This document shows positions 1 to 29,321 of a stretch of DNA of 37,478 nucleotides, in pieces; position 1 is the first letter of the stretch, and each line of letters begins with the position of its first letter. The translations under genes and the position numbers were made by a program. Location of the stretch: positions 63,968 to 101,445 of the forward strand of contig CAXIUT010000037.1 in assembly GCA_964035545.1 (NCBI GenBank), in the 5' to 3' direction. This stretch comes from Bugula neritina. Its lineage: Eukaryota; Animalia; Bryozoa. The notes beneath the pieces were generated by a model. The model was given only the letters and a program-made list of their open reading frames with translations. It did no database searches and had not been told where the DNA came from.

Positions 1-113
1 CCCAACCCCAACCCCAACCCCAACCCCAACCCCAACCCCAACCCCAACCCCAACCCCAACCCCAACCCCAACCCCAACCCCAACCCCAACCCCAACCCCA
101 ACCCCAACCCCAA
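1..113 (+). repeat. Left telomere, (CCCCAA)n
   Basis: Perfect C4A2 tandem repeat at the window start in chromosome 5'-end orientation; C4A2 is the established telomere repeat of Tetrahymena and many other ciliates. Confidence 0.98.
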
Positions 114-208
114 TATCAATATCTTTACTATTACTTCTTATAAGATGCTCTCTTTATTGCTGTTTGATAAATTAGAACATAAATTGAATCATATAAGTAA
201 GTTATACA

Positions 209-3200
209 ATGTCAAAATACAAAAAGCCAGTCGAGCTATCAATTCCTGACAGTTATGAATTAGGTTTCTGTCCTGTCAATCGTCGTTCAGAGTATCCTTT
301 CACCATTTTTAACCCTAATGCTCGTCCTCTTACATATCTCTTCAAATTCACATAATTCGCAGTCAGTCCATCCAAAGGAGTTCTTCTACCTAACACTTAT
401 AGTCAGTTTAAAATAGATTTTGCACCCAAGTAAGCTTCAGTTACAGTTGGAACAGTCATTCTTGAAGTCGAAGGCGAAGAACAGAGAATAATAAAGTTGA
501 GTGCAGTTGGAAAATATCCCTATATTAGTACAAACATGTCATAGATTGATTTTGGAAACGTGTTGGTAACTAAGTCAGTGAGTCGAGAGTTGTTAATTCG
601 AAATAATTCTGAAGTACCAGCATAATTCAGGATATAAAACCAGGGAGGTGATGGATAATACGATGAACAGTTGTTTGGATTTCATCCTGATGTGGGTATT
701 ATTCCTCCTAAAATGACATTTTCTGTAAAAGTAAGCTATACTCCTATATTTGCTGATATTAAGACAGCTGCATCGTTTAAAATAATATGCGAAAGTGGAA
801 ATTAAATACCTATTGGATTGAAAAGTTATAGTCATAGATTTAATGTGTCTTTCAATACTAACTCAATCAATTTTGGATAAATCAAATTGGATAATACTTG
901 TACTAAAGTTTTAACTATTACTAATAATTCAGAAATGAATACTTAGTTTTAATTTTTTACAGATGCAGGAAATATCTTTTTGTTCAATTAAACTAAAGGC
1001 ACTCTGGCAAAAAATACATACACTAAAATTATTATCTAATTTAGACCCAGAAACACAGTTACTTATTATGAAAGAATATATTGCTTGATAAGAAACCATC
1101 TCTTGTGCTATGTAGATCTTTTAGGAACTTGCTATGATCTCCTTATAAGACCCTTGCCTCTTGTCCAGCAGCATGTTGATACCTTCAGAAAGAGAGTTAT
1201 TGAAGGTAGAATTTCAGCTATTGAACTCAAGTATATTGAAAATAATCTGCTTCTTAAACTAGCGAAGAGAAATAGTGAAGATACTGAAGAAAACTTTTAT
1301 CAAACTAATTTACAAATCAGAGAGCATCCATATGTCCTTCAGAAATAACTCTTTCTTGAAGGATATAACAATCAACTTGTGTCAGTTAATCATGATCTCT
1401 TAGATTTTGGATATGCTTAGATACTGACCATGTCTGGACAGAAATAAATAGAAGTAGTTAACAAGATGCAGTGTAAACTAAATATCACTTGGATAACTCA
1501 GAAAAGATAAAACCTGAATGGTTAATATATGACAGTATTCCAGGTTTTTCCTGAAAATGCAGTTCTAAAACCTAATATACCAGTTAGATTTAACGTTTCT
1601 TATCGACCTCTCAAAGGAAATAATTACTATTTCCAACATTTGCAATTCTTTGCCAGTAAACAGGCAAGCAAAATATCAAAAAAAACACTTTAATAATTCT
1701 AATATAGATAACTTAAGGCAAAACCTGAAAGTACTCTTCTCAGAAATGTTAAATTGAACCAGACTGTACAATCTAAAGTTAAATAAGATGTAGAATCAAT
1801 TGAAGTACTACCTCCGATTAGTGGAATTGTGAGATGTGTGGGTCATTCATTTGGTCCTAGTTCTCTGCCATTTATTCCTATTCTTAAAATATTACCTCCA
1901 AAGGTTATATTCAAGCCTTGTCTTAGGGGAAATTCAGTTTATGATAGTATTGAACTGATCAATCAATCTGACACTCCTGTTTTCTTCAAAATAGGAGGAG
2001 ATTCTCAGAGAGTATTCAGAGCTTACCCAAGAATGGGTTTAATATAAGCTAAGGGATTTTCTATAGTTGGACTCTAGTTTAGTCCAAAGTAGTATAAAAA
2101 CTATAAATCATCAATGTCAATTTCTTTAAACGATCTTCCAGGTGCGAATTCTAAGATAGTACTGAATGGAATTTGTACTTAGCCTGATTTAAAATTTGAG
2201 AATAACGGTAGAATATTTTTTGCTCCAACTTTTACAGGAGTTTGTACCAAAAAGAAATTTATAATTGAAAATTTATCAAAAACTAAAGTAACTTATCGGA
2301 TCAAAGTGCCCTAAAAATATGAAGAATAACTAAGCTTTTAACCTAAATAAAAATAACTTTAAGCTAATGAAACATATACCATGAATGTTTTCTTTGCTCC
2401 AAATCAAAAAAGACACTACAAAATTAATGTTCCTGTTGAGGCTATTTAAGACTGCATCTCTCATAATTTATAATTAGGTTATCACAATCCTGGATCAGCT
2501 ATTCATGAATAATCTATGGCCTAACAAAAATGTAAAGAGTTTAATTTAGAAGTTAATGGATAAGGTTCAGATGGAAGTATTCAGATATCTCATGAATAAA
2601 TTGACTTTAAAACAGTTAAAATCGGTTAGCAAAAGAAAATAACTGTAAAACTTAAAAATGAATCAAGTTGTGCCTTTTTTATTGATCTTCAATTCAAAAA
2701 TAACTGTTTTGATGATGGATATAAAATACCTACTTAAGCTCAGATCATAAATGCTTTTAACACTGATTTCAAAGAAGGAATTTTGCCTGTTAATTCTTAA
2801 ATATAAGTTGGTATATTTTTCAATCCTCAAGAAGTACAAATTTATGATTTAAAATTAATAGCAACAGCTAGATAAAAAATACCTACTCATACAGGTATCA
2901 AAGGTAGAGGATAGAGTTCACAAAAATGTAATGTTAGAATAAAAGCTGAAGGAAACTATCCTTTAATGGAAATAATTGATATTAGAAATGATACTTTGAG
3001 TGTTGCTGCTTTATGGTAGAATTTCCAGATAGCTAAGATTAATAGTTAGATGGGATGTCAACTTGATATGAATGAAAAAAAATATTTAGCTGTAGAAACA
3101 CTAACATTTACATAAGCTAAATAATTGGAAAATAATCTTAAACATTATGATTGGAACCTAGGATATGTTTCAACTAAAAATAAAGCTAGACCAAGAAAAG

Positions 3201-4793
3201 TACTAATTACAGTTAAAAATGTAGGAGGGACACCTCTTGATTATGTATTTAAATTCCCTTCAGATAATAAAGTTTAATAAGAACTATGGGCCGATCCTGG
3301 AGAACCAACTTAAGAATAAGCATATTAAAAGGCAATTCTTGAACATAATATCTTCCAAATCAAATCTAAAAGAGGAAGACTTGAAGCTGGCTAAATAAAA
3401 GATATAGAACTGATATATAGTCCTGTTCCTCTTTAAACAATGAAGTCAAGTGGTCATAGCTAAGTTCATTTCTTGCAGGTAGTTTTTCAAATAGCTGGAG
3501 GAAAATCTTTGGTATTTACTCTTAAAGGAACAACTTTGGGTCCAAATGAAGGTTTACTTACAGTTAAAAAAACTCATTATCATCTTCCAGGTACTCCAAT
3601 TGGCTTAATGACTCCTTTGAGATTTCCAATTGAGATGAACAATGTTGGTTCAATCAAGGTAAACTATAAAACTGAAGTCAAGTATGAATAAGGATAATTT
3701 TAAGATGTTTTTAAAATATAAAATCCTAATTATTTCTTGCTTGCTGGTGAGAATCACTATCTTTATTGTCTTTACAAACCTTTAATAGCTAAAATTTATA
3801 ATTTTACTGTGCTTTTGCATGTATTTGACTTCAATAAGGAGATACAAGTTATCTAACTACACTTACAAGGAAGAGGATTTCCTCAGAGCAAAGCTATTAA
3901 GTAACTTTCAGATCGACCTATTCTAGGTCAGAGAAGCACTGTGAGTTAAATTGGTTCTAAGGTCTTTTTCTCAATTGAAGATATTGACTTCCAGGATATG
4001 TGTCCTGAGTAAACCAAATATCGACTTGTCATTCTTTACAATATGTCTAAAGAACATTCTCTAACTTTTGACTTCCCAACTCAATCTTCAATGGCTGCAA
4101 ACAAGCAAGGTCTGACCTGTGGAGATAAATTTCTTATTTAACCTTTCCAGGGTAATCTTTAACCTGGTAAGTTTGTTGAGTTAAAGATCACCTTATCAGC
4201 TGGCATATCTCCAAGTTTCTATTAAGGATAAATTCCATGTCATATTACTTGGTCGAGCAATAAGTACTCGATTGAGGATAATGATCGAACACAAAAAGAT
4301 GTGTTGATGGTTGCCCAAAAGTAATCATTATTTTTGAGGATCAGAAAGGCTCCAAATTTAGCCGTAATATGAATTTTATTTAGGTAAAGAAAAATCTGAG
4401 TACTATGCCTGTATTATCTGATCCAAAAAAATCTTTATTCGACCATATTTTCTAAAGTATATTTAGCAGTGCTCTTAACGATGAATAGATCAATGACTAC
4501 GTAAAAAAGTTATAGAATGAATAATGTCCAATAGCTGATATGATGAATGATGAGTTGCCGATTGGAATAGGATCATAAGTATTTTTTAATTTATATAGGC
4601 TGAAGATAGGTAGGTTGTTGAGGTGAAGAGAGATTATTCTAACTTTTAGTGGATGATGTTAAACGATTAGTTTTTGGATATTACTGAAATAGTGATGTAA
4701 AATACCTTTTTCAATATTATTCAGTAAACAACTCATCAAGAAAATGATTTCCTTCGGGTGGGAAAGAAGTTCATTCAGGCAAACAAATTATGA
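209..4793 (+). CDS. CFAP65: Cilia- and flagella-associated protein 65 (CFAP65/CCDC108), ~1514 aa
   Basis: With TAR=Glu, exon 209-4363 is open for 1385 codons; 20-nt introns at 4364-4383 and 4579-4598. Repeated Ig-like (ASH/MSP-type) segments, motifs ELGFCPV, SAVGKYP, CYVDLLGTC, C-terminal MENTFFNIIQE. Track ORFs at 1085, 1829 and 3473 are all in this frame. Confidence 0.85.
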
Positions 4794-4832
4794 TATATAA
4801 GATTTTATAATCTATATTTATATTCATCAATC

Positions 4833-5417
4833 ATGCCGCCTAAAAAGAAAGTATAAGCTCCTCCTCCACCTCAGCCACCTCCTCCAGAAAAAGTAGCCAA
4901 CACTATCCTTAAAATAATTACATCTGAAGGAAAAGAGTTCAAAGTAAGTTAGTAGTTATTTACTAAATATTCTCAAAAAGGAAAAGATCTTGTTTAGCAT
5001 GCGAAAGACAACATTATTAAGTTAGAGGAAATCGATGGTCAAAGCTTTTAAATAGTAGTAAATTACTTTTAGATGCATAAAGAAAAATAGCCAATGAAAA
5101 TAGTAGTGCCTATCCGAAGTAATCAGAGTTTAAAACACATAATGTAAGAAAATGATGCTTAGCTAGTTTAAAAAATTAGTAGTAATGGTGATCATGCCAT
5201 ATTGAAAATGATGGATACCTGTCTAACTTTATAAATATAGTCTTTGAGGAAAAGATTGGCATGTGCTGTGGCTTTGAAGTTGATGAGATCAACTATTGAA
5301 GATCTAAAAGAAGAGTATAATTTGGGATAATATGGTTTTGATGAGGAAAGTATGCGCAATTCAATGAAACCTTTGATATAAGAGTTGAGAAAAAATAATA
5401 TGGAAGAATAGATATGA
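4833..5417 (+). CDS. Divergent SKP1-family (POZ/BTB) protein, 194 aa
   Basis: MPPKKKVEAPPPPQPPPPEK...LKIITSEGKEFKVSEE...IKLEEIDGQSFEIVVNYFEMHK...RLACAVALKLMRSTIEDLKEEYNL; intronless. Confidence 0.75.
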
Positions 5418-6031
5418 TCAGTTTATTTCTTAAAATTATGTTTATTGGGATTGGACCTAAGGAGTAACTCCATTTACAGAACTAGAGTCTCCAGGCGTTC
5501 CGGTATTAACGTTCCATCCCAAATAGTAATTTAGTCCGAAAAGAACAGCCCAAATTATTGCTAAAATTGCCAATACCCAAGCGAGACATTTTTCCATTTT
5601 TTTAATACCACCCAAGCCTAATTCTTCATCTGAATAAATGAGAAGCAGAGATTGGTTTTTACCAAGTTTATTGTAAACTTCTTGGATCGTGGGACCAGGT
5701 TTTAGCCGAACATACTTTGTTTTTTATTTGACTTAGTGTAGACAAAAGAAGACAAGTCCTTTTGTTTGTATTTGTTCATAAAGCCTAAACATAGCCTGTT
5801 CTATTTTAAGTTATCTTTTGAATAGCATGCTAAATACTAAAGATAATACAACGGGTTTGTTGGTTCTTTTAAAGATTTTGATGCTTCTTTATGTTTTGCA
5901 AAGTAAACGGGAATACAGTCAGGATGTTTTTGTTTTAAAAAACGCATATGTTGTCTTTAATTCTCGATATTTTGTCTTTAATTTTATTCATTTAGTTTTT
6001 ATGTTTATTATTGATTTGCTTCTTTCTCCAT
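5418..6031 (-). CDS. ATG8/LC3-like ubiquitin-fold protein with C-terminal transmembrane helix, 197 aa
   Basis: 20-nt intron 5830-5849; KQKHPDCIPVY (cf. KYPDRIPVI), TIQEVYNK...LLLIYSDEELGLGG, then hydrophobic CLAWVLAILAIIWAVLFGLNYYLGW. Confidence 0.7.
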
Positions 6032-6089
6032 CAATTATCTTTTGATTTATATATATTTAAATTAAATGAGGAATTTGATAATATTACTA

Positions 6090-7732
6090 TCAATCATTCT
6101 TTGGATTTTTATTATTATGACTTTTAGCTAAAATTGAACGATTAAGTGAAGATTCTACTCTTCTGCTTTTTCCTCTGACAAAAACATCTTTTTTCCTGAG
6201 TTCTAATCCTAAACTTACAATATATTCTCGATTTTATCCTCCAATCTTTCTACTTTAAATGATTCCCATCAAAGCTATTGGTTTTTCATGAGTAGCAATA
6301 TCAAAACTATGTTTTTTACACTTAGGTATACTTCTTGAGCTGCCAATTTCCATAAGATAATCTTTGGATGTAACTATTTTGATGAATTCAATTCCTTTAC
6401 CACAAAATAAGTCCATTGATGTGATATATTCGTATTATCCGAAGGTATGATCGACTGTTTGAATATTAGAAAATTGAGTAGGAATTGAAAATGTTTAAAT
6501 AGTCTTTGTTTATTGTTTTAATTCTTTTATTATTTAATTCTCATATATTTCATAGTCAGTTGTCATCGAAAGGACATGTTAATCACTATAAGTAAATACT
6601 AATCTTTTAATTTTATAATTTTTTTCGACAGGTAATTTCGCACTATCATCGAATTATCGATATATTCCTTGTCCTCTACTAAGTCCACGGAATTACTTTC
6701 TGGTTTAAAAGAGACTTCCAGAAGAATGCATCACTTCTTCAGAATATCTAGCTGTTTTTATCGGTTAGAGAGTGTTGAAATTTTTCCTTTATTTTTATTT
6801 AAGTCTGAAAAGCATAATATTACCTTCTTTTTCTTTTCTAGATATTATTTATTTTGTTTATGCTAGTTCTCTCTAAGTAGTTTTCAATTTAAAGCTAAGA
6901 TTGTCTATTTAGTGTTTATTACTTTTATCATTCATTTTTTTAGCAGTTTATAAACTTTTAAACTTCTATTTTAGTTTTTATAGTTATTAGTTGATTACTG
7001 AATCATTATTATTTTTTTCTTTTGACTTTTCAAGAGGTTTAGTAGATATTTTATTTTCAAGACTAAGGATGTGTTCTCTTAAAGACTTGATATTTTTTTC
7101 TAGTTAATCTTATTTCTTTTTTTGTTCTTGTATTTTCTTTTTCATATGAACTATTTCTTAATTTTGCTGCATTATTTTTTGCGTGAGCTATTCTTCTTTT
7201 TTATAGCTATCTGCATTTTTTTATTGTTTATCTAATTTTTAAAAAAGTTTGATTTGAGCTTTAAGATCTTCATTTATTCTTTCTTTTTCTTTGATTTCAT
7301 TTTTAAAACCGTCAATTTTATCCCCATCAAGATATTTATATTTATATCTAAGTTGTTCAATCTATTTTCTTAGAATACCATTTTTTTTTATTTCGTTTTA
7401 TAACTATTTTTTAGTTAAATCAACTCGAAGATCAGCTCCTTTATGCTATTCTTATTTTGGTTTATGTTGCACTTTTTTGAGAACTGAGTTAAGCTGCTCA
7501 TTTAGCTGCTTAAAATCACTTTTAAGAGTTTAATTTTGCTTTTTCTGGCGCTGTATAAGTTTCAACCTTATTAAATCATCTGGTACATTTCAGAGATTCG
7601 ATTCTGGTATTTTTTAATAATTCGACGCGTGCCTTCTTTCGATTCCATCTCAGACTCTACAACCACAATCTAGGAGCGTAGTGATTCGTAAGATGCCTGA
7701 ATCTCCTTATCATTTGTATTTCCTTCTTACAT
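6090..7732 (-). CDS. Coiled-coil protein with C-terminal jacalin-like beta-prism domain, ~540 aa
   Basis: 20-nt intron 7567-7586 restores frame; E/K-rich N-terminal half; C-terminal GQGIYREFDD...EYEYITSMDLFCGKGIEFIKIVTS...PIALMG...YIVSLGLEL. Confidence 0.6.
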
Positions 7733-7954
7733 CAATATAAATAATAAAACATATCAAATCATAACTCATTAAAAATAGAGAAAAAATGACACTATTAAAA
7801 ATCATGGGCAAAAAGAGGAAAAAAGAATAATATCGATCATAACCTCTCTTTAGATATCAGAATATCTAAATAAATAAATTATTGAAATAGCTTAATTAAT
7901 ATAATCTATATTATTTGGTATTCTTTATTTTGATTCAAACTATTGATTCATAAA

Positions 7955-9433
7955 TCATCTTAACATATGTTAGTTGACCTCTTTTTGGTCCAAGATGGAG
8001 TTTTAGAATTCTTTATAAGATTAAAGCTAATCTGTTTGCTCATGAAAGGCTATCATAAGCTACCTGATTGATTCTGAATGCATGAAATATTTTGATTCTA
8101 CAAGTAAATCGGCATTCCACATTAACTTTCTTATATCATCCATCTACTCAGGGAATTGTATTAGATAAAATATCATCATTTCAAGGAAAAAATTCATAGC
8201 ATATTGATTGCTGAAGTAAACTTCAATTATTTCTTTCTTTTTACTTGCAGATAACTAGGTTTTTCCAAACCATCTAAGAAATCTTGAATTTGCTCCTATT
8301 GAGTTTGTTTAGATAAAGCAGAAGAAAGTTGAAGCTTTCTGAAGAATATTTTTGTAGAGATTGAGGATAAAACTAAATTTTATATTCTCAGCTATTTCTG
8401 CCTCAAGGAAGCTATCAACAGTGATTTTAAAGATATTTGCAAGTTAACAGTGTTCAGTATTCTTATAGATTATACTAAGAAGGTTTTCAAAGATTATTTC
8501 ATAATCTTCACTTAATAGCATATGGAAACATTGACTTTTGCGACTTTGCTTTCGAAGAAAATCTAAATAGATAAAAAATTACGAGCTAAGCACGAGTAAG
8601 TAAGCACAAGGTTGAATGGATTAAAATTTTAAGCCTTTTTTATCAAATTCAATCGATCAGCAAAACCTTTAAAAAGAGCATTCAAGAGTTCAAATGAGTG
8701 ACTTTATGATTTCCCTAAGTATTCTTGAAAAAATTCTAAGAAAGAAGTTATTTTTCCTGTTCTGTTAAGCAAAAGTCCTAAATATATTTCATCGTTAATC
8801 ATTTCTCTTTTTTGTTTTCTTATTTCATAAAGACAGTCGAAAAATAGTTCTTGTAGATTTTCATCTTGAGCATGACTTAGATGATGGTCTAAATTAACCA
8901 ATATCATTTTTGATATTTGAATGTCTCCATTTTGAACTTCTTAATCGTATCTTTGATGTTTTATATATCGATAGACTAGTTCAAGTATTGATCCAATTGC
9001 ATCTTATGAAAGTCTTCCCTTCCAACTATCTTTGTTTTCCATCTCAAGATATTCATTGATGATAAAAAGAAAGTCTAGTTCTAATAGTTCATCATCATCA
9101 AGATTGTCTGTCATCATGACAAAACCATGCAGTCGAAATAATTAAAATTATGAAGCTAAAGATCTTTCTTTTAGTTCATTGAAGAAAATTCTTCTTTGCT
9201 CTTTACAGTCAGTGATTTCCACAAAGTGTTTGAGTAGGTTTTAGATGGTGAGTTAGTTGCTTATCATCAAGTTCAATATATTATACCAGTTCAAAATCAT
9301 AATAAGATATACTTACCTCCTTTTTAAATTAGGAAATAATAATAAAATGTATTAATTATCATCTCTTTTCATGGCTTAGATAAGATGTAACTTCCTCATT
9401 ATTTCTATAACAAAAATAAATACTATTTTTCAT
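7955..9433 (-). CDS. Hypothetical alpha-helical protein, ~480 aa
   Basis: Open under TAR=Glu with introns 9405-9423 (19 nt, 5' end uncertain) and 8563-8582 (20 nt); includes track ORF 8704-8907; no motif recognised. Confidence 0.65.
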
Positions 9434-9564
9434 CACTCTAAATTATTTCAAAAATCTTCGAAAATAAAATTGCTCAATAAAAAAAACTTTTAATAGTAAA
9501 AAGGCATTCGTTGTCTTTAGTGTCTATGTAGTTAAAAATAAGTCAAAAAGAGATTTAGAATATT

Positions 9565-9570
9565 AAAAAA
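9565..9570 (-). terminator. Pol III oligo-T terminator of the 5S gene
   Basis: TTTTTT on the minus strand immediately after the 5S 3' end. Confidence 0.85.
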
Positions 9571-9690
9571 GGGCTGTCGTCACACGGACTTCCCAAGCGG
9601 TCCCCCACCTTAGTACTAACCGTGCCTGAAGCCGCTTAACTTCGGAGTTCGGATGGGATCCGGTGCTTTCAGCTTAGTATGGACGACAGC
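9571..9690 (-). rRNA. 5S ribosomal RNA
   Basis: 120 nt GCTGTCGTCCATAC...CCGGATCCCATCCGAACTCCGAAGTTAAGC...TTAGTACTAAGGTGGGGGACC...GACGACAGCCC; terminal helix GCTGTCGTC/GACGACAGC; box A and box C present. Confidence 0.97.
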
Positions 9691-9826
9691 AATGTTTTTG
9701 TTTACCTAACTCTAAATGCTGTTCCCCCACCTCAATTTTTTTATTACCTTTCCTTTCACATTGTTGATTTTTTCCTACTCTTCAACAATGATATATTTCA
9801 ATGATAAGTAAATGAATAAATAATAA

Positions 9827-10764
9827 TCATACAAGAGGATCAAAGAATATGATCTAATCTTCCATTTAATTTAGTTCTTGAGGAGTAATTGTTTTGTTTT
9901 GAATTTTCATAGTATATCTCATTAAAACTACATAAAATAAACTATACTGCGTTGATATCCTTCCTCTATTTTGTTAATCTTCATCTTAACTACTGGATCA
10001 TTTCTGAATTTAATTGTTGCGTTCTCATAAACTGCAAAAGCAGGTTCAAATTATGAACCAAGACCTTCTTATTCTAAGATCTATTCTTGCTCTTTTTCAT
10101 GGTTTCCTAGATCAGTAAGCAACTGAGGATTTTGTGCAAGTTCTTCTTAAGTATATTCGGTTAATTTTTTGAAGACTGATACTTGTTGAAGGTAAGATTC
10201 TAACTTAAGATGATTTATACTTTTGGTGATTTGATTTTGAATGGCAAGGAATTTATCTGTAGTCAAAGATGAGGGGATGTTAACGTTAAAGGTTGGCATT
10301 TTTCCTGATAATGATAGTTGATAATCTCTTTCTTGTTGTTTGACTAAAAAACTGACTTCTTCATTGTCTTGATAAGTTTATAGACTTTTATTAAAGGCTT
10401 CTCCTGAATGAAAACATATTTACCTGTAATACTTTATTTAATGCAGATTTATTAGGTAGCTTTTTATACTTCTTATTTAATTTTAATGGGTGACTATGGT
10501 CCATTGATGAACATTTCAACCATTTGAGCATTGATATTGTTTCTGGTCTGTCTTGCGATATTGAGTGCGAAAGTAGCTATTTGTTTATACATGATATATT
10601 TTTATTTTCTTAGCAATTTTAGAATTTTGATTACTTTTTCAACATTAAGATCTTGTGTATTGCGTTCTTCAAGGATGTTCTTGATGAAAAGACCAGCAAC
10701 ACCTATATTCAAGAGAATTTATACCTGTTGCTACTACACCCACTCCTAATAAGGCGTATTTCAT
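9827..10764 (-). CDS. Hypothetical protein with N-terminal signal anchor, ~291 aa
   Basis: MKYALLGVGVVATGVAGLFIKNILEE...; introns 10703-10724 (22 nt), 10404-10423 (20 nt) and 9928-9947 (20 nt) give a continuous frame. Confidence 0.75.
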
Positions 10765-10973
10765 CGATTGTAAGAATTAATAGTGGTAAAATCAACAACT
10801 GTATTAACTTATATTATTAGAACCAAATAATAAAATATATTAGTGATTAATAATTATGCTAGATTCTAGTTATTTGATTTCTTAATTTCGATATTATAGT
10901 ATTTAAGCTAATTGTTTATGAATGATATTATTTTTCATATTAAATAAGAATTAATATTCAAATGGAGGTACAA

Positions 10974-11446
10974 TCACTGGTAAGCTTTCTTGCAGGCTTC
11001 TTAATAGGTTAGTTTGCTTATTTTTTATGGTTAAAATGACTTATTTGCTCCACTACGATCTATCATCCATCTAAATAATTCAATTGATACTTTGCAGCAT
11101 TAGAAAAGGTGGATACTTTGACTCCACTGATTTTACCTTCTGCCACTTCTTGCTCTTTGATATTATTGGGGTTAACATAGGTATCCTTGGTCGTTGAAGT
11201 GTATTTGATATCATTAGGAAGCTAAATTCCTTTGTTGAAGTTTCCTTTATTGCAATTTTCAGTGATTTTTCCGTATGTTTTAGCATAGAGATTTTCTGAT
11301 TTTACAGCTGGAATATATCCCACATATCCTGGAATATGTGCATCATTTATTTTACCTGAATCTAATGACTCATTAGCTGCTTAGTTTGCTGGCATGTATC
11401 CCATGTATCCAACAATAGGGTTCTTTTTTGATTTAGTATCGATCAT
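10974..11446 (-). CDS. FAM166/CIMIP2-like axonemal microtubule inner protein, 150 aa
   Basis: PIVGYMGYMP and HIPGYVGYIPAVKSENLYAKTYGKIT (PGY-G-P repeats); 20-nt intron 11071-11090. Confidence 0.8.
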
Positions 11447-11503
11447 CTTAAGAAGTTATATATAATTTAGAATAAAAATAATAATAAACAATCATCATCA
11501 ATT

Positions 11504-11589
11504 TTGGGGTTGGGGTTGGGGTTGGGGTTGGGGTTGGGGTTGGGTTGGGGTTGGGGTTGGGGTTGGGGTTGGGTTGGGGTTGGGGTTGG
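11504..11589 (+). repeat. Internal telomere tract (TTGGGG)n, chromosome 3'-end orientation
   Basis: About 14 G4T2 units, two of them G3 variants. Confidence 0.95.
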
Positions 11590-11729
11590 AAAGTGTTGAA
11601 GGCATTTATGGATGAAACATGATGTTAGTTAAATAACTATTTATGATTTTGGCTATTTTGTTTGATTTTTTTTCATCTTTAGAAATTCTGGAATGGTGTA
11701 TAATATTTACAAGCAGGAGTAAATAACGA

Positions 11730-26442: not shown

Positions 26443-26526
26443 GGGGGTTGGGTTGGGTTGGGGGTTGGGGTTGGGGTGGGGTTGGGGTGGGGTTGGGTGT
26501 TGGGTTGGGGTTGGGTTGGGGTTGGG
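26443..26526 (+). repeat. Internal telomere tract, imperfect (GGGGTT)n
   Basis: G4T2 units mixed with G3T2, G4T1 and other variants. Confidence 0.92.
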
Positions 26527-27235: not shown

Positions 27236-27429
27236 CCTAAATAAATTTTATGACTCTAAATATCATTAATTTAATTTTTAAAAATAAAGTCACTATTTAT
27301 TTTAGTATAAAGGAAATATATTTTATTGAAAATTGAAACTATTAAAACTCAGATTAAATAACTTAAATTTGTATTTTGTCTTCTATAGTAGAATTTAAGA
27401 TAATAGTAATAAATATTCTTTTATAACTT

Positions 27430-28046
27430 ATGGAACCAGATTCAGTCAAAGTCGTTATTGTTGGAGATGGTGCTGTGGGAAAAACTTCAATGCTTCTGAG
27501 GTAAAAATTAGATAAAGTAGTTACTCTTAAAATAAAATTCCACGAGACTATGAGCCAACCATTTTTGAAAAACAAGATTATTAATGTCAAAATAGATGAT
27601 AAAGTTATAAATCTTGGACTATGGTATTTATTGTTATTATATAGGGATACAGCTGGACAATAGTAATTTGCTAAGTTGCGTCCTCTTGCATATAAAAATG
27701 TAGATATATTTCTCATTGTTTTTTCAATTGATGATCGAAATTCTTTAACAAATGCTTTTAAAAAGGTAGTTTTAAAAATATTTAGTGGTACCCAGAAGTT
27801 CATTCTGTCAACCCAAGAGCTGTTATTTCAATTGTAGGAAATAAAATTGATCTAAGAAATAGAGCAATAAATGACAAGTATTTAATATAAGGAAATTAAG
27901 TTATAGAATAGATTAAAAAAAATGAATTTTAAATGTATTTATAATTAGTGTAGCGCACTAACTCAACAAGGTCTAGCTCAAGTTTTTCAAAAACAATTAG
28001 AAAATGGAGGCAAATAAAACCATAAGTTTGCTGTAATCTTATCTGA
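27430..28046 (+). CDS. Rho/Rac family small GTPase
   Basis: VKVVIVGDGAVGKTS, YEPTIFEN, WDTAGQEEFAKLRPLAY, VGNKIDLR, YNECSALTQQGL, CaaX CNLI; ~20-nt introns; apparent 1-nt indels near 27570 and 27990. Confidence 0.92.
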
Positions 28047-28130
28047 TAAGTTTTTATTTATTATGTTTCAATAAATAAAAAGATAATTTTTTAACATCTA
28101 TGTTTCAGTTAAATTTTTTATTGGTCACTA

Positions 28131-29321
28131 TCAACTATCATTCAATCTATCTAGAGCTAAATTTAGCCAGAAAAGGCATGCTTTTTAGATTATTTCATCT
28201 TTGAAGTTATACCTAGGATTATGTAGAAAGACTTCTTCTTCTTTTACTTTTGTACAAAGAAAAAAAAAGCTCCAGGACATTTTTAGGTATAACATCCGAA
28301 ATCTTCACTAGCTCGAAAAGGCAAAGTCCCAGCACTAACTTTATCTTAGCCAAATAATGCTTTTGCTACTCTGATTACATTATCAGATTATTTCTTTGAA
28401 TTATCATTTTTATTTTGACTTTTTAATTCACATTCAACTTTAAATCCTTCTTTTTATATTTATGAGAGAAGTTCCCTTATTTTAGTGAAAATCAAATCTC
28501 TTGTTTCATCATCAAAGGATCTAAGAGATCCTTCAATAACTGCACTTTCACTGATAACATTAAATCTTTACCCAGCTTGAAAGATAGGTAAAGTACATGC
28601 GAAATTTCTATTTTACTATTTTAGCTGCTTTAAATAGTCCTGAAATTTTGTATAAAATTCCATAGCTTTCCAAATAGCGACTTTTAAGTTTTAAGGAGCA
28701 CTTCCATGGCCTCCTTCTCCAATTATTTTTATCTGAATAACATTCATTCGACTCATTACAGCTCCTTCTTTGCACCATATATCTCCTAATTTACCTACAG
28801 GCCAATTATGAAAGCCATAAACTTAATTTACTTGTTCAAGACATCCCAATTTTGACCATTGTATTAGCTCCATATTAAGGTCCTTCTTCAGAAGGTTGAA
28901 ATAGAAGTCTCACTTTTTTATTATTTGGAATTTTATCTAATTCTTTTAAAAGGAGAGGAACAAAACCAATAAGGCAAGCCATATGTCCATCGTGTCCACA
29001 CATATGAGCAGCACCTACATTTTTAGAAATATAAGGGAGATCTTCATTGAGTTCACACATTGCAAGAGCATCCATATCTGCTCGAAAAGCAACACAGAAA
29101 TTTTATCCCTTAGGTTCAGCTTTTCCTTTGATATCGACAATTAATCCGGTAGGTTATTTGCCTTCTTTGCCAACTTATCTTATTGAATTTTCTGAGACTC
29201 CGAATGAAAGAAGCATATTTTTAAGTCTCTTATGAGTTTAGAATTCTTGAAAAGATATTTCAGGATATTGATGAAGTTATCTTCTGAAAGAAATTATTTT
29301 GTTGAGAAGATCAGCTTCCAT
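28131..29321 (-). CDS. M20D-family amidohydrolase
   Basis: RRELHQYPEISFQE, FRADMDAL, HMCGHDGH, FQPSEEG, GFHNWP, GEGGHGS, SEDFG, LHNPRYNF; no intron seen; apparent indels near 28850 and 28260. Confidence 0.9.

What the first reader, a model, noticed from the sequence alone, without database searches (positions are those of the whole stretch)
5418..6031. ATG8-like protein with a genetically encoded membrane anchor
Seen: an ATG8-like ubiquitin fold ending ...IYSDEELGLGG followed by a ~22-aa hydrophobic helix and a short polar tail, in the error-free segment. Established: canonical ATG8 is cut by ATG4 after a C-terminal (F/Y)G and lipidated through ATG7/ATG3. Here the aromatic before Gly is replaced by Leu. 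Inference: either a lipidation-independent membrane-tethered ATG8 or a membrane-bound precursor released by ATG4. I recall TM-containing ATG8s being reported in fungi but know of none in ciliates.
Basis: partly seen in the sequence, partly recalled or inferred. Interest (0 to 1): 0.72.

Follow-up and report, generated by a model that had tools for sequence, protein, structure and literature searches.

The report
Ciliate ATG8-like protein with transmembrane anchor
A ciliate whose DNA contaminates a moss-animal genome assembly has a small gene for a protein shaped like the autophagy tag ATG8 that carries its own membrane-spanning helix instead of relying on a lipid anchor; it belongs to a conserved family I found no description of, and is a natural test of what ATG8 does when fixed to a membrane.

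Summary
On the minus strand, 6031-5418, lies a 197-codon gene read in the peritrich code (TAA/TAG = Glu). It has one 20-nt intron at 5849-5830, not the splice the raw frames suggest.

The protein has four parts:
- an acidic N-terminus;
- a ~100-aa ubiquitin-like domain;
- a conserved G-[ML]-x-G and KMEK linker;
- one strongly hydrophobic helix (residues 142-164) followed by a variable polar tail.

About 35 unannotated homologues share this layout: metagenome fragments and one transcript-derived ORF. Eight full-length models could be built from genomic loci; in all of them the intron sits at the same site.

Pfam's ATG8 model does not detect the family. Deeper methods do:
- Profile-profile comparison aligns it to GABARAPL2 over 95 columns (86% probability, about 10 SD above shuffles).
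- An AlphaFold model of a homologue (pLDDT 85) matches only ATG8-family structures among its top 50 Foldseek hits.
- The family's first Gly aligns with ATG8's lipidated Gly, preceded by Leu/Met/Ile rather than Phe/Tyr.

The linker after that Gly is as conserved as the fold itself, which favours a permanent anchor over a discarded propeptide. ATG4 release is not excluded. No RNA evidence exists for this locus. I rate it a new variant of a known kind.

The parts
5850..6031 (-). Exon 1: ATG at 6031, codons 1-60 plus two bases of codon 61. Codons 1-28 (6031-5948) are an acidic, variable N-terminus with 6 TAA=Glu codons. From codon 29 come the conserved helix and strand 1, with the motif HPDCIPV.
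   Evidence: The exon-1 piece aligns with the N-terminal pieces of 6 homologues and with transcript-derived P0014.
5830..5849 (-). 20-nt GT..AG intron, phase 2. Its removal gives ...PTNP-F-MLFKRELKIEQAM...
   Evidence: The same site and phase, 20-22 nt long, is seen in loci L012, L014, L015 and L019-L022. The intronless transcript ORF P0014 reads SPFILFGKHLKIEQAM across the site. The second genomic copy keeps both boundaries but has 3 changes inside. No RNA reads are available for this locus.
5421..5829 (-). Exon 2: last base of codon 61 through codon 197.
   Evidence: Continuous frame. It is matched end to end by family fragments that run from the Ubl through the TM helix without a stop.
5616..5947 (-). 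ATG8-like ubiquitin-fold domain, residues 29-132 (interrupted by the intron), ending at G132, which aligns with ATG8 G116.
   Evidence: hhalign: 70.8% with the tool and 85.8%, E 5.4e-6, locally, against shuffles of 12.9+-2.7. AF2 model of homologue P0014, pLDDT 84.9. Foldseek top 50 all ATG8 family. VIA-align Z 12.7 to GABARAP. ESM Atlas nearest clusters are ATG8/APG12.
5589..5618 (-). Conserved linker, residues 132-141 (G-L-G-G-I-K-K-M-E-K). Family pattern: G-[ML]-x-G-[ILM]-x-x-[ML]-[EQ]-K.
   Evidence: Alignments. Mean pairwise identity of region 129-141 is 54%, against 56% for the Ubl domain.
5520..5588 (-). Transmembrane helix, residues 142-164.
   Evidence: Kyte-Doolittle 19-mer maximum 2.69. 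All 8 full-length family models score 1.8-2.7, with K/R on the N-side and almost none on the C-side. Mean identity is 41%, with a conserved mid-helix Trp.
5421..5519 (-). Variable polar tail, residues 165-197, rich in S/G/T/N/E; predicted to lie on the lumenal or extracellular side.
   Evidence: 15% identity across the family; tail length 14-35 aa.
5418..5420 (-). TGA stop, the only stop codon in this genetic code.
   Evidence: It abuts the TGA of the convergent ORF 4794-5417.

Best explanation
The gene encodes a 197-aa single-pass membrane protein of a peritrich ciliate. Its cytosolic part is a divergent ATG8-fold ubiquitin-like domain. Its C-terminus, just past the position of ATG8's lipidated glycine, continues through a conserved linker into a transmembrane helix and a short variable tail on the other side of the membrane. 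I propose that the helix permanently replaces the phosphatidylethanolamine anchor. On that view the protein is inserted like a tail-anchored protein and displays an ATG8-like surface on one particular membrane without needing ATG4, ATG7 or ATG3. There it would act as a fixed docking platform whose partner set differs from that of canonical ATG8, because the LIR-docking pocket is remodelled.

Shown: the gene model by comparative evidence, the fold (on a homologue), the hydrophobic helix, family conservation, and the register of the Gly.

Inferred: topology, absence of cleavage, the docking role and the membrane it marks.
For: Gene model and genetic code.

Family: about 35 homologues share the Ubl-linker-TM layout, with continuous ORFs across the junction.

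ATG8 fold:
- hhalign gives 70.8% and 85.8%, score 40.9, against shuffles of 12.9+-2.7 with a maximum of 25.4.
- The AF2 model of homologue P0014 has pLDDT 84.9.
- The Foldseek top 50 are all GABARAP, GATE-16, LC3 or Atg8, with TM-scores of 0.65-0.73.
- VIA-align gives GABARAP Z 12.7 and LC3B Z 12.2, against 9.4 or less for non-autophagy Ubls.
- The nearest ESM Atlas clusters are ATG8/APG12.

Anchor rather than propeptide:
- The 13 residues around and after the aligned Gly are as conserved (54%) as the Ubl domain (56%), and the TM helix is 41% identical with a fixed Trp. Established knowledge is that canonical ATG8 propeptides are short and unconserved.
- The residue before the Gly is L/M/I/V/T, never F/Y.
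- The same ciliate's canonical ATG8 keeps ...TFG followed by 2 residues.

Topology: K/R lie on the Ubl side of the helix in all 8 models, the N-terminus is strongly hydrophilic with no signal-like stretch, and the tail is 14-35 aa.

Selection: the second copy differs by 8 synonymous and 3 non-synonymous changes.
Against: - There is no RNA or protein evidence for this locus. The runs that hold it are DNA contigs.
- The fold was predicted for a homologue (53-72% identical to the window's own pieces), not for the window protein itself.
- Pfam ATG8 and APG12 HMMs do not detect the family.
- The Gly that aligns with G116 is nearly invariant and is followed by Met or Leu, as LC3B's is by Met (from memory). 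The ciliate has two ATG4 genes. Cleavage is therefore chemically plausible.
- A conserved linker could equally be a regulated cleavage site.
- Nothing identifies the target membrane or the partners.
Confidence: 0.55

Rival explanations
1. Membrane-bound precursor. The protein is inserted through its helix, then cut by ATG4 after G132. This releases a soluble ATG8-like modifier, which may then be lipidated or conjugated, and leaves a small TM peptide behind. The anchor would serve to store or localise the precursor.
For: The Gly aligning with ATG8 G116 is nearly invariant in the family. It is followed by M/L, as in LC3B (from memory). Two Peptidase_C54 (ATG4) genes lie on ciliate contigs of the same assembly. 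The F-F pair in strand 3, which from memory is needed for ATG4B recognition of LC3, is kept as YFF/VFF.
Against: The residues after the Gly, and the helix itself, are conserved far more than a discarded propeptide should be. There is no aromatic residue before the Gly. The canonical ATG8 of the same organism keeps TFG. No family member was seen that ends at the Gly.
Confidence: 0.27
2. A ubiquitin-fold membrane adaptor with no link to autophagy. The domain descends from the ATG8/ATG12 lineage but now works like other membrane Ubl proteins (MUB/UBL3, Herp, TMUB), for example recruiting an E2, p97 or a trafficking factor.
For: The LIR-docking residues are changed in the hhalign register: F60 to Ala, P52 to Lys, and K46/K48/R67 are not basic. 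ATG12 structures score almost as well as ATG8 (Z 11.9 against 12.7). The ATG8 HMM fails.
Against: ATG8 matches cover the N-terminal helix and have higher identity (19-23% against 13-14%) than ATG12. The ATG8-specific (K/H)-(Y/H)-P-D-x-I-P-V motif is kept. All 30 nearest ESM clusters are ATG8/APG12.
Confidence: 0.13
3. Gene-model artefact. The Ubl and the hydrophobic segment are not made as one protein, for instance because the mRNA ends or is spliced before the helix, or the locus is not expressed.
For: There are no RNA reads for this locus. The only transcript-derived homologue, P0014, ends at ...GINKM.
Against: ORFs run unbroken from Ubl to tail in at least 15 independent fragments and 8 loci, with protein-level conservation across the junction. 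Substitutions between the two genomic copies are biased to synonymous changes.
Confidence: 0.05

Closest known systems
ATG8 / GABARAP / LC3 family (Pfam PF02991)
   Same: The same fold, including the helix before strand 1. The (K/H)(Y/H)PDxIPV motif, the F-F strand, the L-x-(I/V)-Y-S-D strand and a Gly at the G116 position are all present. Figures: hhalign 86%, Foldseek TM 0.70-0.73, VIA Z 12.7.
   Different: It is not detected by the Pfam HMM. It has a 7-8-residue hairpin insert after strand 3. The LIR-pocket residues are changed. The residue before the Gly is aliphatic instead of aromatic. The chain continues into a conserved linker and a TM helix instead of ending or carrying a short disposable propeptide.
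ATG12 (Pfam PF04110)
   Same: Same clan and fold, with Z 11.9 and 10.7. It also ends in a Gly used for conjugation.
   Different: ATG12 matches start only at model residue 9-10, so they lack the N-terminal helix. Identity is 13-14%. The PF04110 scan misses the locus. ATG12 is never membrane-embedded.
Apicomplexan ATG8 (Plasmodium, Toxoplasma)
   Same: Another alveolate ATG8 that sits constitutively on one organelle membrane and has non-autophagic roles (abstracts of PMC9973341, PMC4626856 and PMC4206529, listed).
   Different: It is still attached by lipidation of a terminal Gly through ATG7/ATG3. It has no TM helix.
Hfl1-dependent, lipidation-independent recruitment of Atg8 to the vacuole (yeasts; PMC8176713)
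   Same: Atg8 acts on a membrane without PE conjugation, held there by a transmembrane protein.
   Different: In yeast the anchor is a separate protein that binds Atg8. Here the anchor is encoded in the same polypeptide.
Membrane-anchored ubiquitin-fold proteins, MUB/UBL3 (PMC4996978); also Herp and TMUB (from memory)
   Same: A ubiquitin-fold domain held permanently on the cytosolic face of a membrane as an adaptor.
   Different: MUBs are ubiquitin-type folds anchored by C-terminal prenylation. Herp and TMUB are ubiquitin-type with hairpin or multiple TM segments. None has the ATG8 fold.

Membership tests
ATG8 (Pfam PF02991) | Match to the family HMM above the gathering score (27 bits) | tested here: not met
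   There was no hit for the window's pieces, or for P0014, P0016, P0021, P0005 and P0003, even at E<=10. The six-frame PF02991 scan of the whole assembly finds the ciliate's canonical ATG8 but not this locus. The joined window protein itself could not be submitted.
ATG8 (Pfam PF02991) | Beta-grasp fold with an N-terminal helical extension packed on it | tested here: met
   This was tested on homologue P0014, not on the window protein. AF2 pLDDT is 84.9, with secondary-structure order H-E-E-H-E-E-H-E. The Foldseek top 50 are all ATG8 family, aligned from about residue 1. VIA Z is 12.2-12.7.
ATG8 (Pfam PF02991) | Glycine at the end of the fold (G116/G120), the site of ATG4 cleavage and PE attachment | tested here: met
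   In hhalign the family's G of [LIMV]-G-[ML]-x-G (window G132) aligns with G116. It is present in all 8 full-length models.
ATG8 (Pfam PF02991) | Aromatic residue (F/Y) immediately before that Gly | tested here: not met
   The window has Leu131 and its second copy has Ile. The family has L/M/I/V/T.
ATG8 (Pfam PF02991) | LIR-docking site: hydrophobic pockets HP1/HP2 and flanking basic residues (GABARAP numbering, from memory) | tested here: inconclusive
   In the hhalign register, I21, P30 and L50 are kept (L32, P41, L63). However F60 becomes Ala, P52 becomes Lys, and K46/K48/R67 become N/F/Q. This rests on a remote alignment, not on a structure of the window protein.
ATG8 (Pfam PF02991) | Processing by ATG4 and conjugation to PE by ATG7/ATG3 | not testable with these tools
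   Only the presence of two ATG4 genes in the ciliate contigs was shown.
ATG12 (Pfam PF04110) | HMM match; fold without the N-terminal helices; C-terminal Gly conjugated to ATG5 | tested here: not met
   The PF04110 scan misses the locus. ATG12 structures align only from model residue 9-10, with 13-14% identity.
Single-pass, C-terminally anchored (tail-anchored-like) membrane protein | One hydrophobic helix near the C-terminus, no N-terminal signal sequence, a short lumenal tail, and positive charges on the cytosolic side | tested here: met
   The Kyte-Doolittle maximum is 2.69 at residues 142-160, with no other window above 1.6. The N-terminal windows score -2.2 to -2.7. There are 1-3 K/R before the helix and none after it in 7 of 8 models, and tails are 14-35 aa. 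Tested by hydropathy only; no dedicated TM or signal-peptide predictor was available.
Peritrich nuclear genetic code (NCBI table 30) | TAA and TAG read as Glu, with TGA the only stop | tested here: met
   DTAGQ-TAG-TAA-F occurs in a Rho-type GTPase ORF. Family columns with TAA/TAG pair with E/D 32 times and Q 7 times. The gene ends at TGA.

The most novel reading that the evidence does not exclude
Peritrich ciliates have hard-wired an ATG8-type protein into a membrane through its own transmembrane helix. This would create a conjugation-independent ATG8 system beside the canonical one, with its own remodelled docking surface. It would permanently mark one organelle, for example phagosomal, contractile-vacuole or stalk/secretory membranes. 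That would be the first natural case showing that ATG8's membrane function can be separated from ATG4, ATG7 and ATG3.
Probability: 0.5. Interest if true: 0.75.

Novelty: new variant of a known kind. Interest (0 to 1): 0.62.

Why it matters
The ATG8 family is defined by reversible covalent attachment to membrane lipid, and much of the field's debate concerns what ATG8 does once it is on a membrane. Researchers have had to build artificial membrane-tethered ATG8s to address this.

A natural, conserved ATG8-fold protein with a built-in anchor, sitting beside a canonical ATG8 and two ATG4s in the same organism, is an evolutionary experiment on that question. It shows which parts of the fold are kept when conjugation is no longer needed, and which parts change, here the docking pocket. 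It also adds an ATG8-type member to the small set of membrane-resident ubiquitin-fold adaptors.

The Pfam ATG8 and APG12 models do not detect the family, and I found no name for it. Its members exist only as fragments in metagenomes, because the peritrich genetic code breaks standard gene calling.

Tried and rejected
- **Pieces alone.** Stop-free pieces of the window gene gave nothing in Pfam or PDB: only noise such as PPI at E 0.18 and HIV protease at E 0.3. They are too short to be informative.
- **Profile against PDB sequences.** A profile of the family gave 0 hits at E<=10.
- **My first splice guesses.**
  - A 23-nt intron at 5837-5815 and the 13/16-nt alternatives were rejected, because homologues read F-(K/G)-(K/R)-x-L-K-I-E-Q in the frame that guess removes.
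  - An 18-nt 'intron 2' (5732-5715) was rejected because the insert it would remove is conserved as protein in P0017 and others.
- **First AlphaFold job.** With alignment A4, which lacked N-terminal rows, it gave pLDDT 59 and meaningless Foldseek rows. MAFFT had misplaced the N-terminal pieces in A2 and A3. A smaller set (A6) aligned them correctly and gave the usable model.
- **RNA evidence.** No RNA run holds the locus. The four holders are contigs with no joints, so the splice and the transcript end remain unconfirmed here.
- **GPI-anchor signal.** Rejected: there is no N-terminal signal sequence, and 14-35 polar residues follow the hydrophobic stretch.
- **Ubiquitin-style LRLRGG diglycine precursor.** Rejected as the family rule: the window's GG is not conserved (the family has G-[ML]-x-G), and the fold matches ATG8 better than ubiquitin or SUMO.
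- **Word-index search with P0014.** It found only itself.
- **ESM Atlas feature search.** A query with the exon-2 piece of a homologue (L022, 123 aa, Ubl C-half plus TM) gave no usable hit.
- **Literature.** Four full-text searches for a natural TM-bearing ATG8 found none. A search for the transcript accession prefix found nothing.

Full report
**Where this comes from.** The window is G000:C46:63968-101445 of a 216-Mb assembly.

The window itself is not bryozoan. It begins with C4A2 repeats (1-113) and has G4T2 blocks near 11,494-11,590 and 26,445-26,525. It is AT-rich and its genes are full of in-frame TAA/TAG. A Rho-type GTPase ORF (27337-28374) reads DTAGQ-TAG-TAA-F where DTAGQE is universal, so TAA/TAG encode Glu, the peritrich nuclear code. 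The finding lies on an ~11.6-kb two-telomere minichromosome (1-11,590) of a contaminating or epibiont peritrich ciliate.

**Gene model.** On the minus strand an ATG at 6031 opens a frame that reaches ...HPDCIPVYFAKH...EPTNP. A second frame carries ...LKIEQAM... through ...IYSDEELGLGG, a hydrophobic stretch and a polar tail, down to TGA at 5420-5418.

My first splice guess (23 nt) was wrong. Homologues showed that F-K-R-E-L-K belongs to the protein. The only GT..AG that restores it is the 20-nt intron at 5849-5830, which gives P-F-M-L-F.

Three things support this intron:
- Seven homologous genomic loci have an intron at the same codon and phase, 20 nt in five of them and 21-22 nt in the other two.
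- A transcript-derived ORF from EukProt (P0014) reads straight across the site.
- The second genomic copy keeps the boundaries but carries 3 of its differences inside these 20 nt.

The product is 197 aa, with 13 TAA/TAG codons.

Searches used stop-free pieces by reference. The joined sequence was built only inside local scripts, for translation, hydropathy, MAFFT and hhalign.

**It is a real, conserved gene.**
- An exhaustive phmmer search with the 88-aa piece 5723-5460 found 20 true relatives. A profile search added 14 more.
- All are unnamed or 'hypothetical'. They come from metagenomes, Logan assemblies and EukProt, and are fragmented exactly as expected when TAA/TAG are read as stops.
- From seven fetched loci I built full-length models of 171-200 aa.
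- In these loci TAA/TAG columns pair with E/D 32 times and Q 7 times, so the family as sampled is peritrich.
- A second copy 8.8 kb upstream on the same contig (G000:C46:60654-60980) is 98.3% identical. It differs in the CDS by 8 synonymous and 3 non-synonymous changes. This is the locus of the earlier first-reader note s1-439969.
- Contigs from four public runs in three studies carry the gene. None is RNA.

**Is the domain ATG8-like?** Sequence-to-profile methods say no:
- Pfam gives no hit for the pieces or for P0014.
- Six-frame scans of the assembly with PF02991 and PF04110 miss the locus, though they find the ciliate's canonical ATG8 on C188.
- A family profile finds nothing among PDB sequences.

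More sensitive methods agree that it is:
- hhalign of the family against 25 GABARAPL2-type proteins gives 70.8% probability, E 3.8e-5. With the full-length local alignment it gives 85.8%, E 5.4e-6, score 40.9 over 95 columns.
- Two hundred column shuffles gave 12.9+-2.7 (maximum 25.4), and the reversed alignment gave 12.0.
- All 30 nearest ESM Atlas clusters for P0014 are ATG8/APG12, with score 0.91 and 187-194 shared features.
- AlphaFold on P0014, using an 18-row alignment that covers the N-terminus, reached pLDDT 84.9 and pTM 0.75.
- Its top 50 Foldseek PDB matches are all GABARAP, GATE-16, LC3, Atg8 or LGG-1, with TM 0.65-0.73 and rmsd 1.6-4.0 A over ~112 columns.
- An independent aligner ranks GABARAP (Z 12.7, 12.5), LC3B (12.2) and LC3A (11.5) first. 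ATG12 follows at 11.9 and 10.7, and other ubiquitin folds score 9.4 or less.
- The nearest ESM Atlas model is an ATG8/APG12 cluster, TM 0.76.

ATG8 matches begin at model residue 1, so they include the helix before strand 1, and share 19-23% identity. ATG12 matches begin at residue 9-10 with 13-14% identity.

The caveat is that the fold was predicted for a homologue, not for the window protein.

**What is kept and what is changed.** In the hhalign register:
- Kept: the (K/H)(Y/H)PDxIPV motif, the hydrophobic strand with F-F, the L-x-(I/V)-Y-S-D strand and the terminal Gly.
- Window L131-G132 falls on F115-G116.
- The residue before the Gly is L/M/I/V/T across the family, never aromatic.
- Residues that I recall as forming the LIR-docking site are partly kept (L32, P41, L63) and partly replaced: F60 to an invariant Ala, P52 to Lys, and K46/K48/R67 to non-basic residues.
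- A 7-8-residue hairpin is inserted after strand 3.

**The anchor.**
- Residues 142-164 form the only hydrophobic segment, with a 19-mer Kyte-Doolittle mean of 2.69.
- All eight full-length relatives have one such segment (1.8-2.7). K/R lie on the Ubl side and almost none on the far side. A polar tail of 14-35 aa follows, and the N-termini are strongly hydrophilic.
- This predicts a tail-anchored-like topology with the Ubl domain in the cytosol.
- Mean pairwise identity among the eight models is 56% for the Ubl domain, 54% for the 13 residues around and after the Gly (G-[ML]-x-G-[ILM]-x-x-[ML]-[EQ]-K), 41% for the helix with a fixed central Trp, 15% for the tail and 27% for the N-terminus.

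**Mechanism.** Canonical ATG8 propeptides are short and unconserved. That is established knowledge and was not tested here. In this family the post-Gly segment is as constrained as the fold, and the aromatic residue that ATG4 normally reads is missing. The same ciliate's canonical ATG8 keeps ...TFG plus two residues. I therefore favour a permanent, conjugation-independent anchor (0.55).

Release by ATG4 remains a serious rival (0.27). The Gly is nearly invariant and is followed by Met or Leu, and two ATG4 genes lie on ciliate contigs C101 and C96.

A third reading is a non-autophagic adaptor role for a fold that has drifted away from ATG8 function (0.13). It differs from my best reading mainly in which partners are expected.

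An artefactual fusion is unlikely (0.05), given unbroken and conserved ORFs across the junction in many independent sequences.

**Comparison and novelty.** I found no report of a natural ATG8-fold protein with its own TM helix. The nearest concepts are:
- Hfl1-mediated lipidation-independent recruitment of Atg8 (PMC8176713);
- constitutively organelle-bound apicomplexan ATG8 (PMC9973341, PMC4626856);
- prenylated MUB/UBL3 proteins (PMC4996978).

I file it as a new variant of a known kind: ATG8-like by fold and remote homology, but not a member by Pfam's criterion. The held library misses most subscription journals, so prior description cannot be excluded.

Noticed in passing
window 1-113, ~11494-11590, ~26445-26525: The window is a chain of ciliate minichromosomes inside a bryozoan assembly contig. 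The first unit has C4A2 on the left and G4T2 on the right. The second and third units start directly after the previous G4T2 block, with no C4A2 of their own. This is either an assembly join through telomeres or a real head-to-tail arrangement.
   Followed up: partly
window 5684 (run X1, record 2): A 73-nt Logan unitig (depth ~32, against ~90-110 for the locus) joins GGGGTT repeats directly to position 5684, inside exon 2 of this gene. The orientation is wrong for a normal left telomere. It could be alternative fragmentation, a chimera or a graph artefact.
   Followed up: no
G000:C46:60654-60980 (L018), 2.8-3.4 kb before the window start: A second copy of the whole gene and its flanks, 98.3% identical over 3.3 kb. 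It lies at a different distance from its chromosome end. It reads I instead of L before the Gly and has 3 changes in the intron.
   Followed up: yes
G000:C188:66040-66362 (L003) and G000:C126:23351-23647 (L009): The same ciliate has a canonical ATG8 ending ...PTFG-TV-stop, next to a G4T2 telomere. It also has a weak ATG8-like gene (25 bits) that ends ...YANTAPF-stop with no terminal Gly.
   Followed up: partly
G000:C101:9173-10018 (L027), G000:C96:11754-12440 (L028): Two ciliate ATG4 (Peptidase_C54) genes, 176 and 149 bits, with 12-14 in-frame TAA/TAG codons. The bryozoan's own ATG4 genes are on C5 and C2.
   Followed up: no
window 188-4372 (+): A ~1395-codon ORF with CFAP65-type Ig and MSP domains (PF24507 at 31 bits, PF00635 at 24.6 bits on pieces). 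It is a ciliary protein gene on the same minichromosome.
   Followed up: partly
window 4794-5417 (+) and 6090-7589 (-): Gene packing is extremely tight. The convergent 208-codon ORF ends at 5417, abutting this gene's TGA at 5418-5420. The upstream 500-codon coiled-coil ORF ends 58 nt before this gene's ATG.
   Followed up: no
window 27337-28374 (+): A Rho/Rac-type GTPase ORF whose switch II reads DTAGQ-TAG-TAA-F. It is a compact diagnostic for the TAA/TAG = Glu code.
   Followed up: yes
L012, L014, L015, L019-L022 (metagenome and Logan contigs): The homologous genes range from 37% to 53% GC and come from several metagenome projects. All have the same tiny intron (20 nt in five, 21-22 nt in two) at one conserved site, so intron position is stable across diverse peritrichs.
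   Followed up: partly
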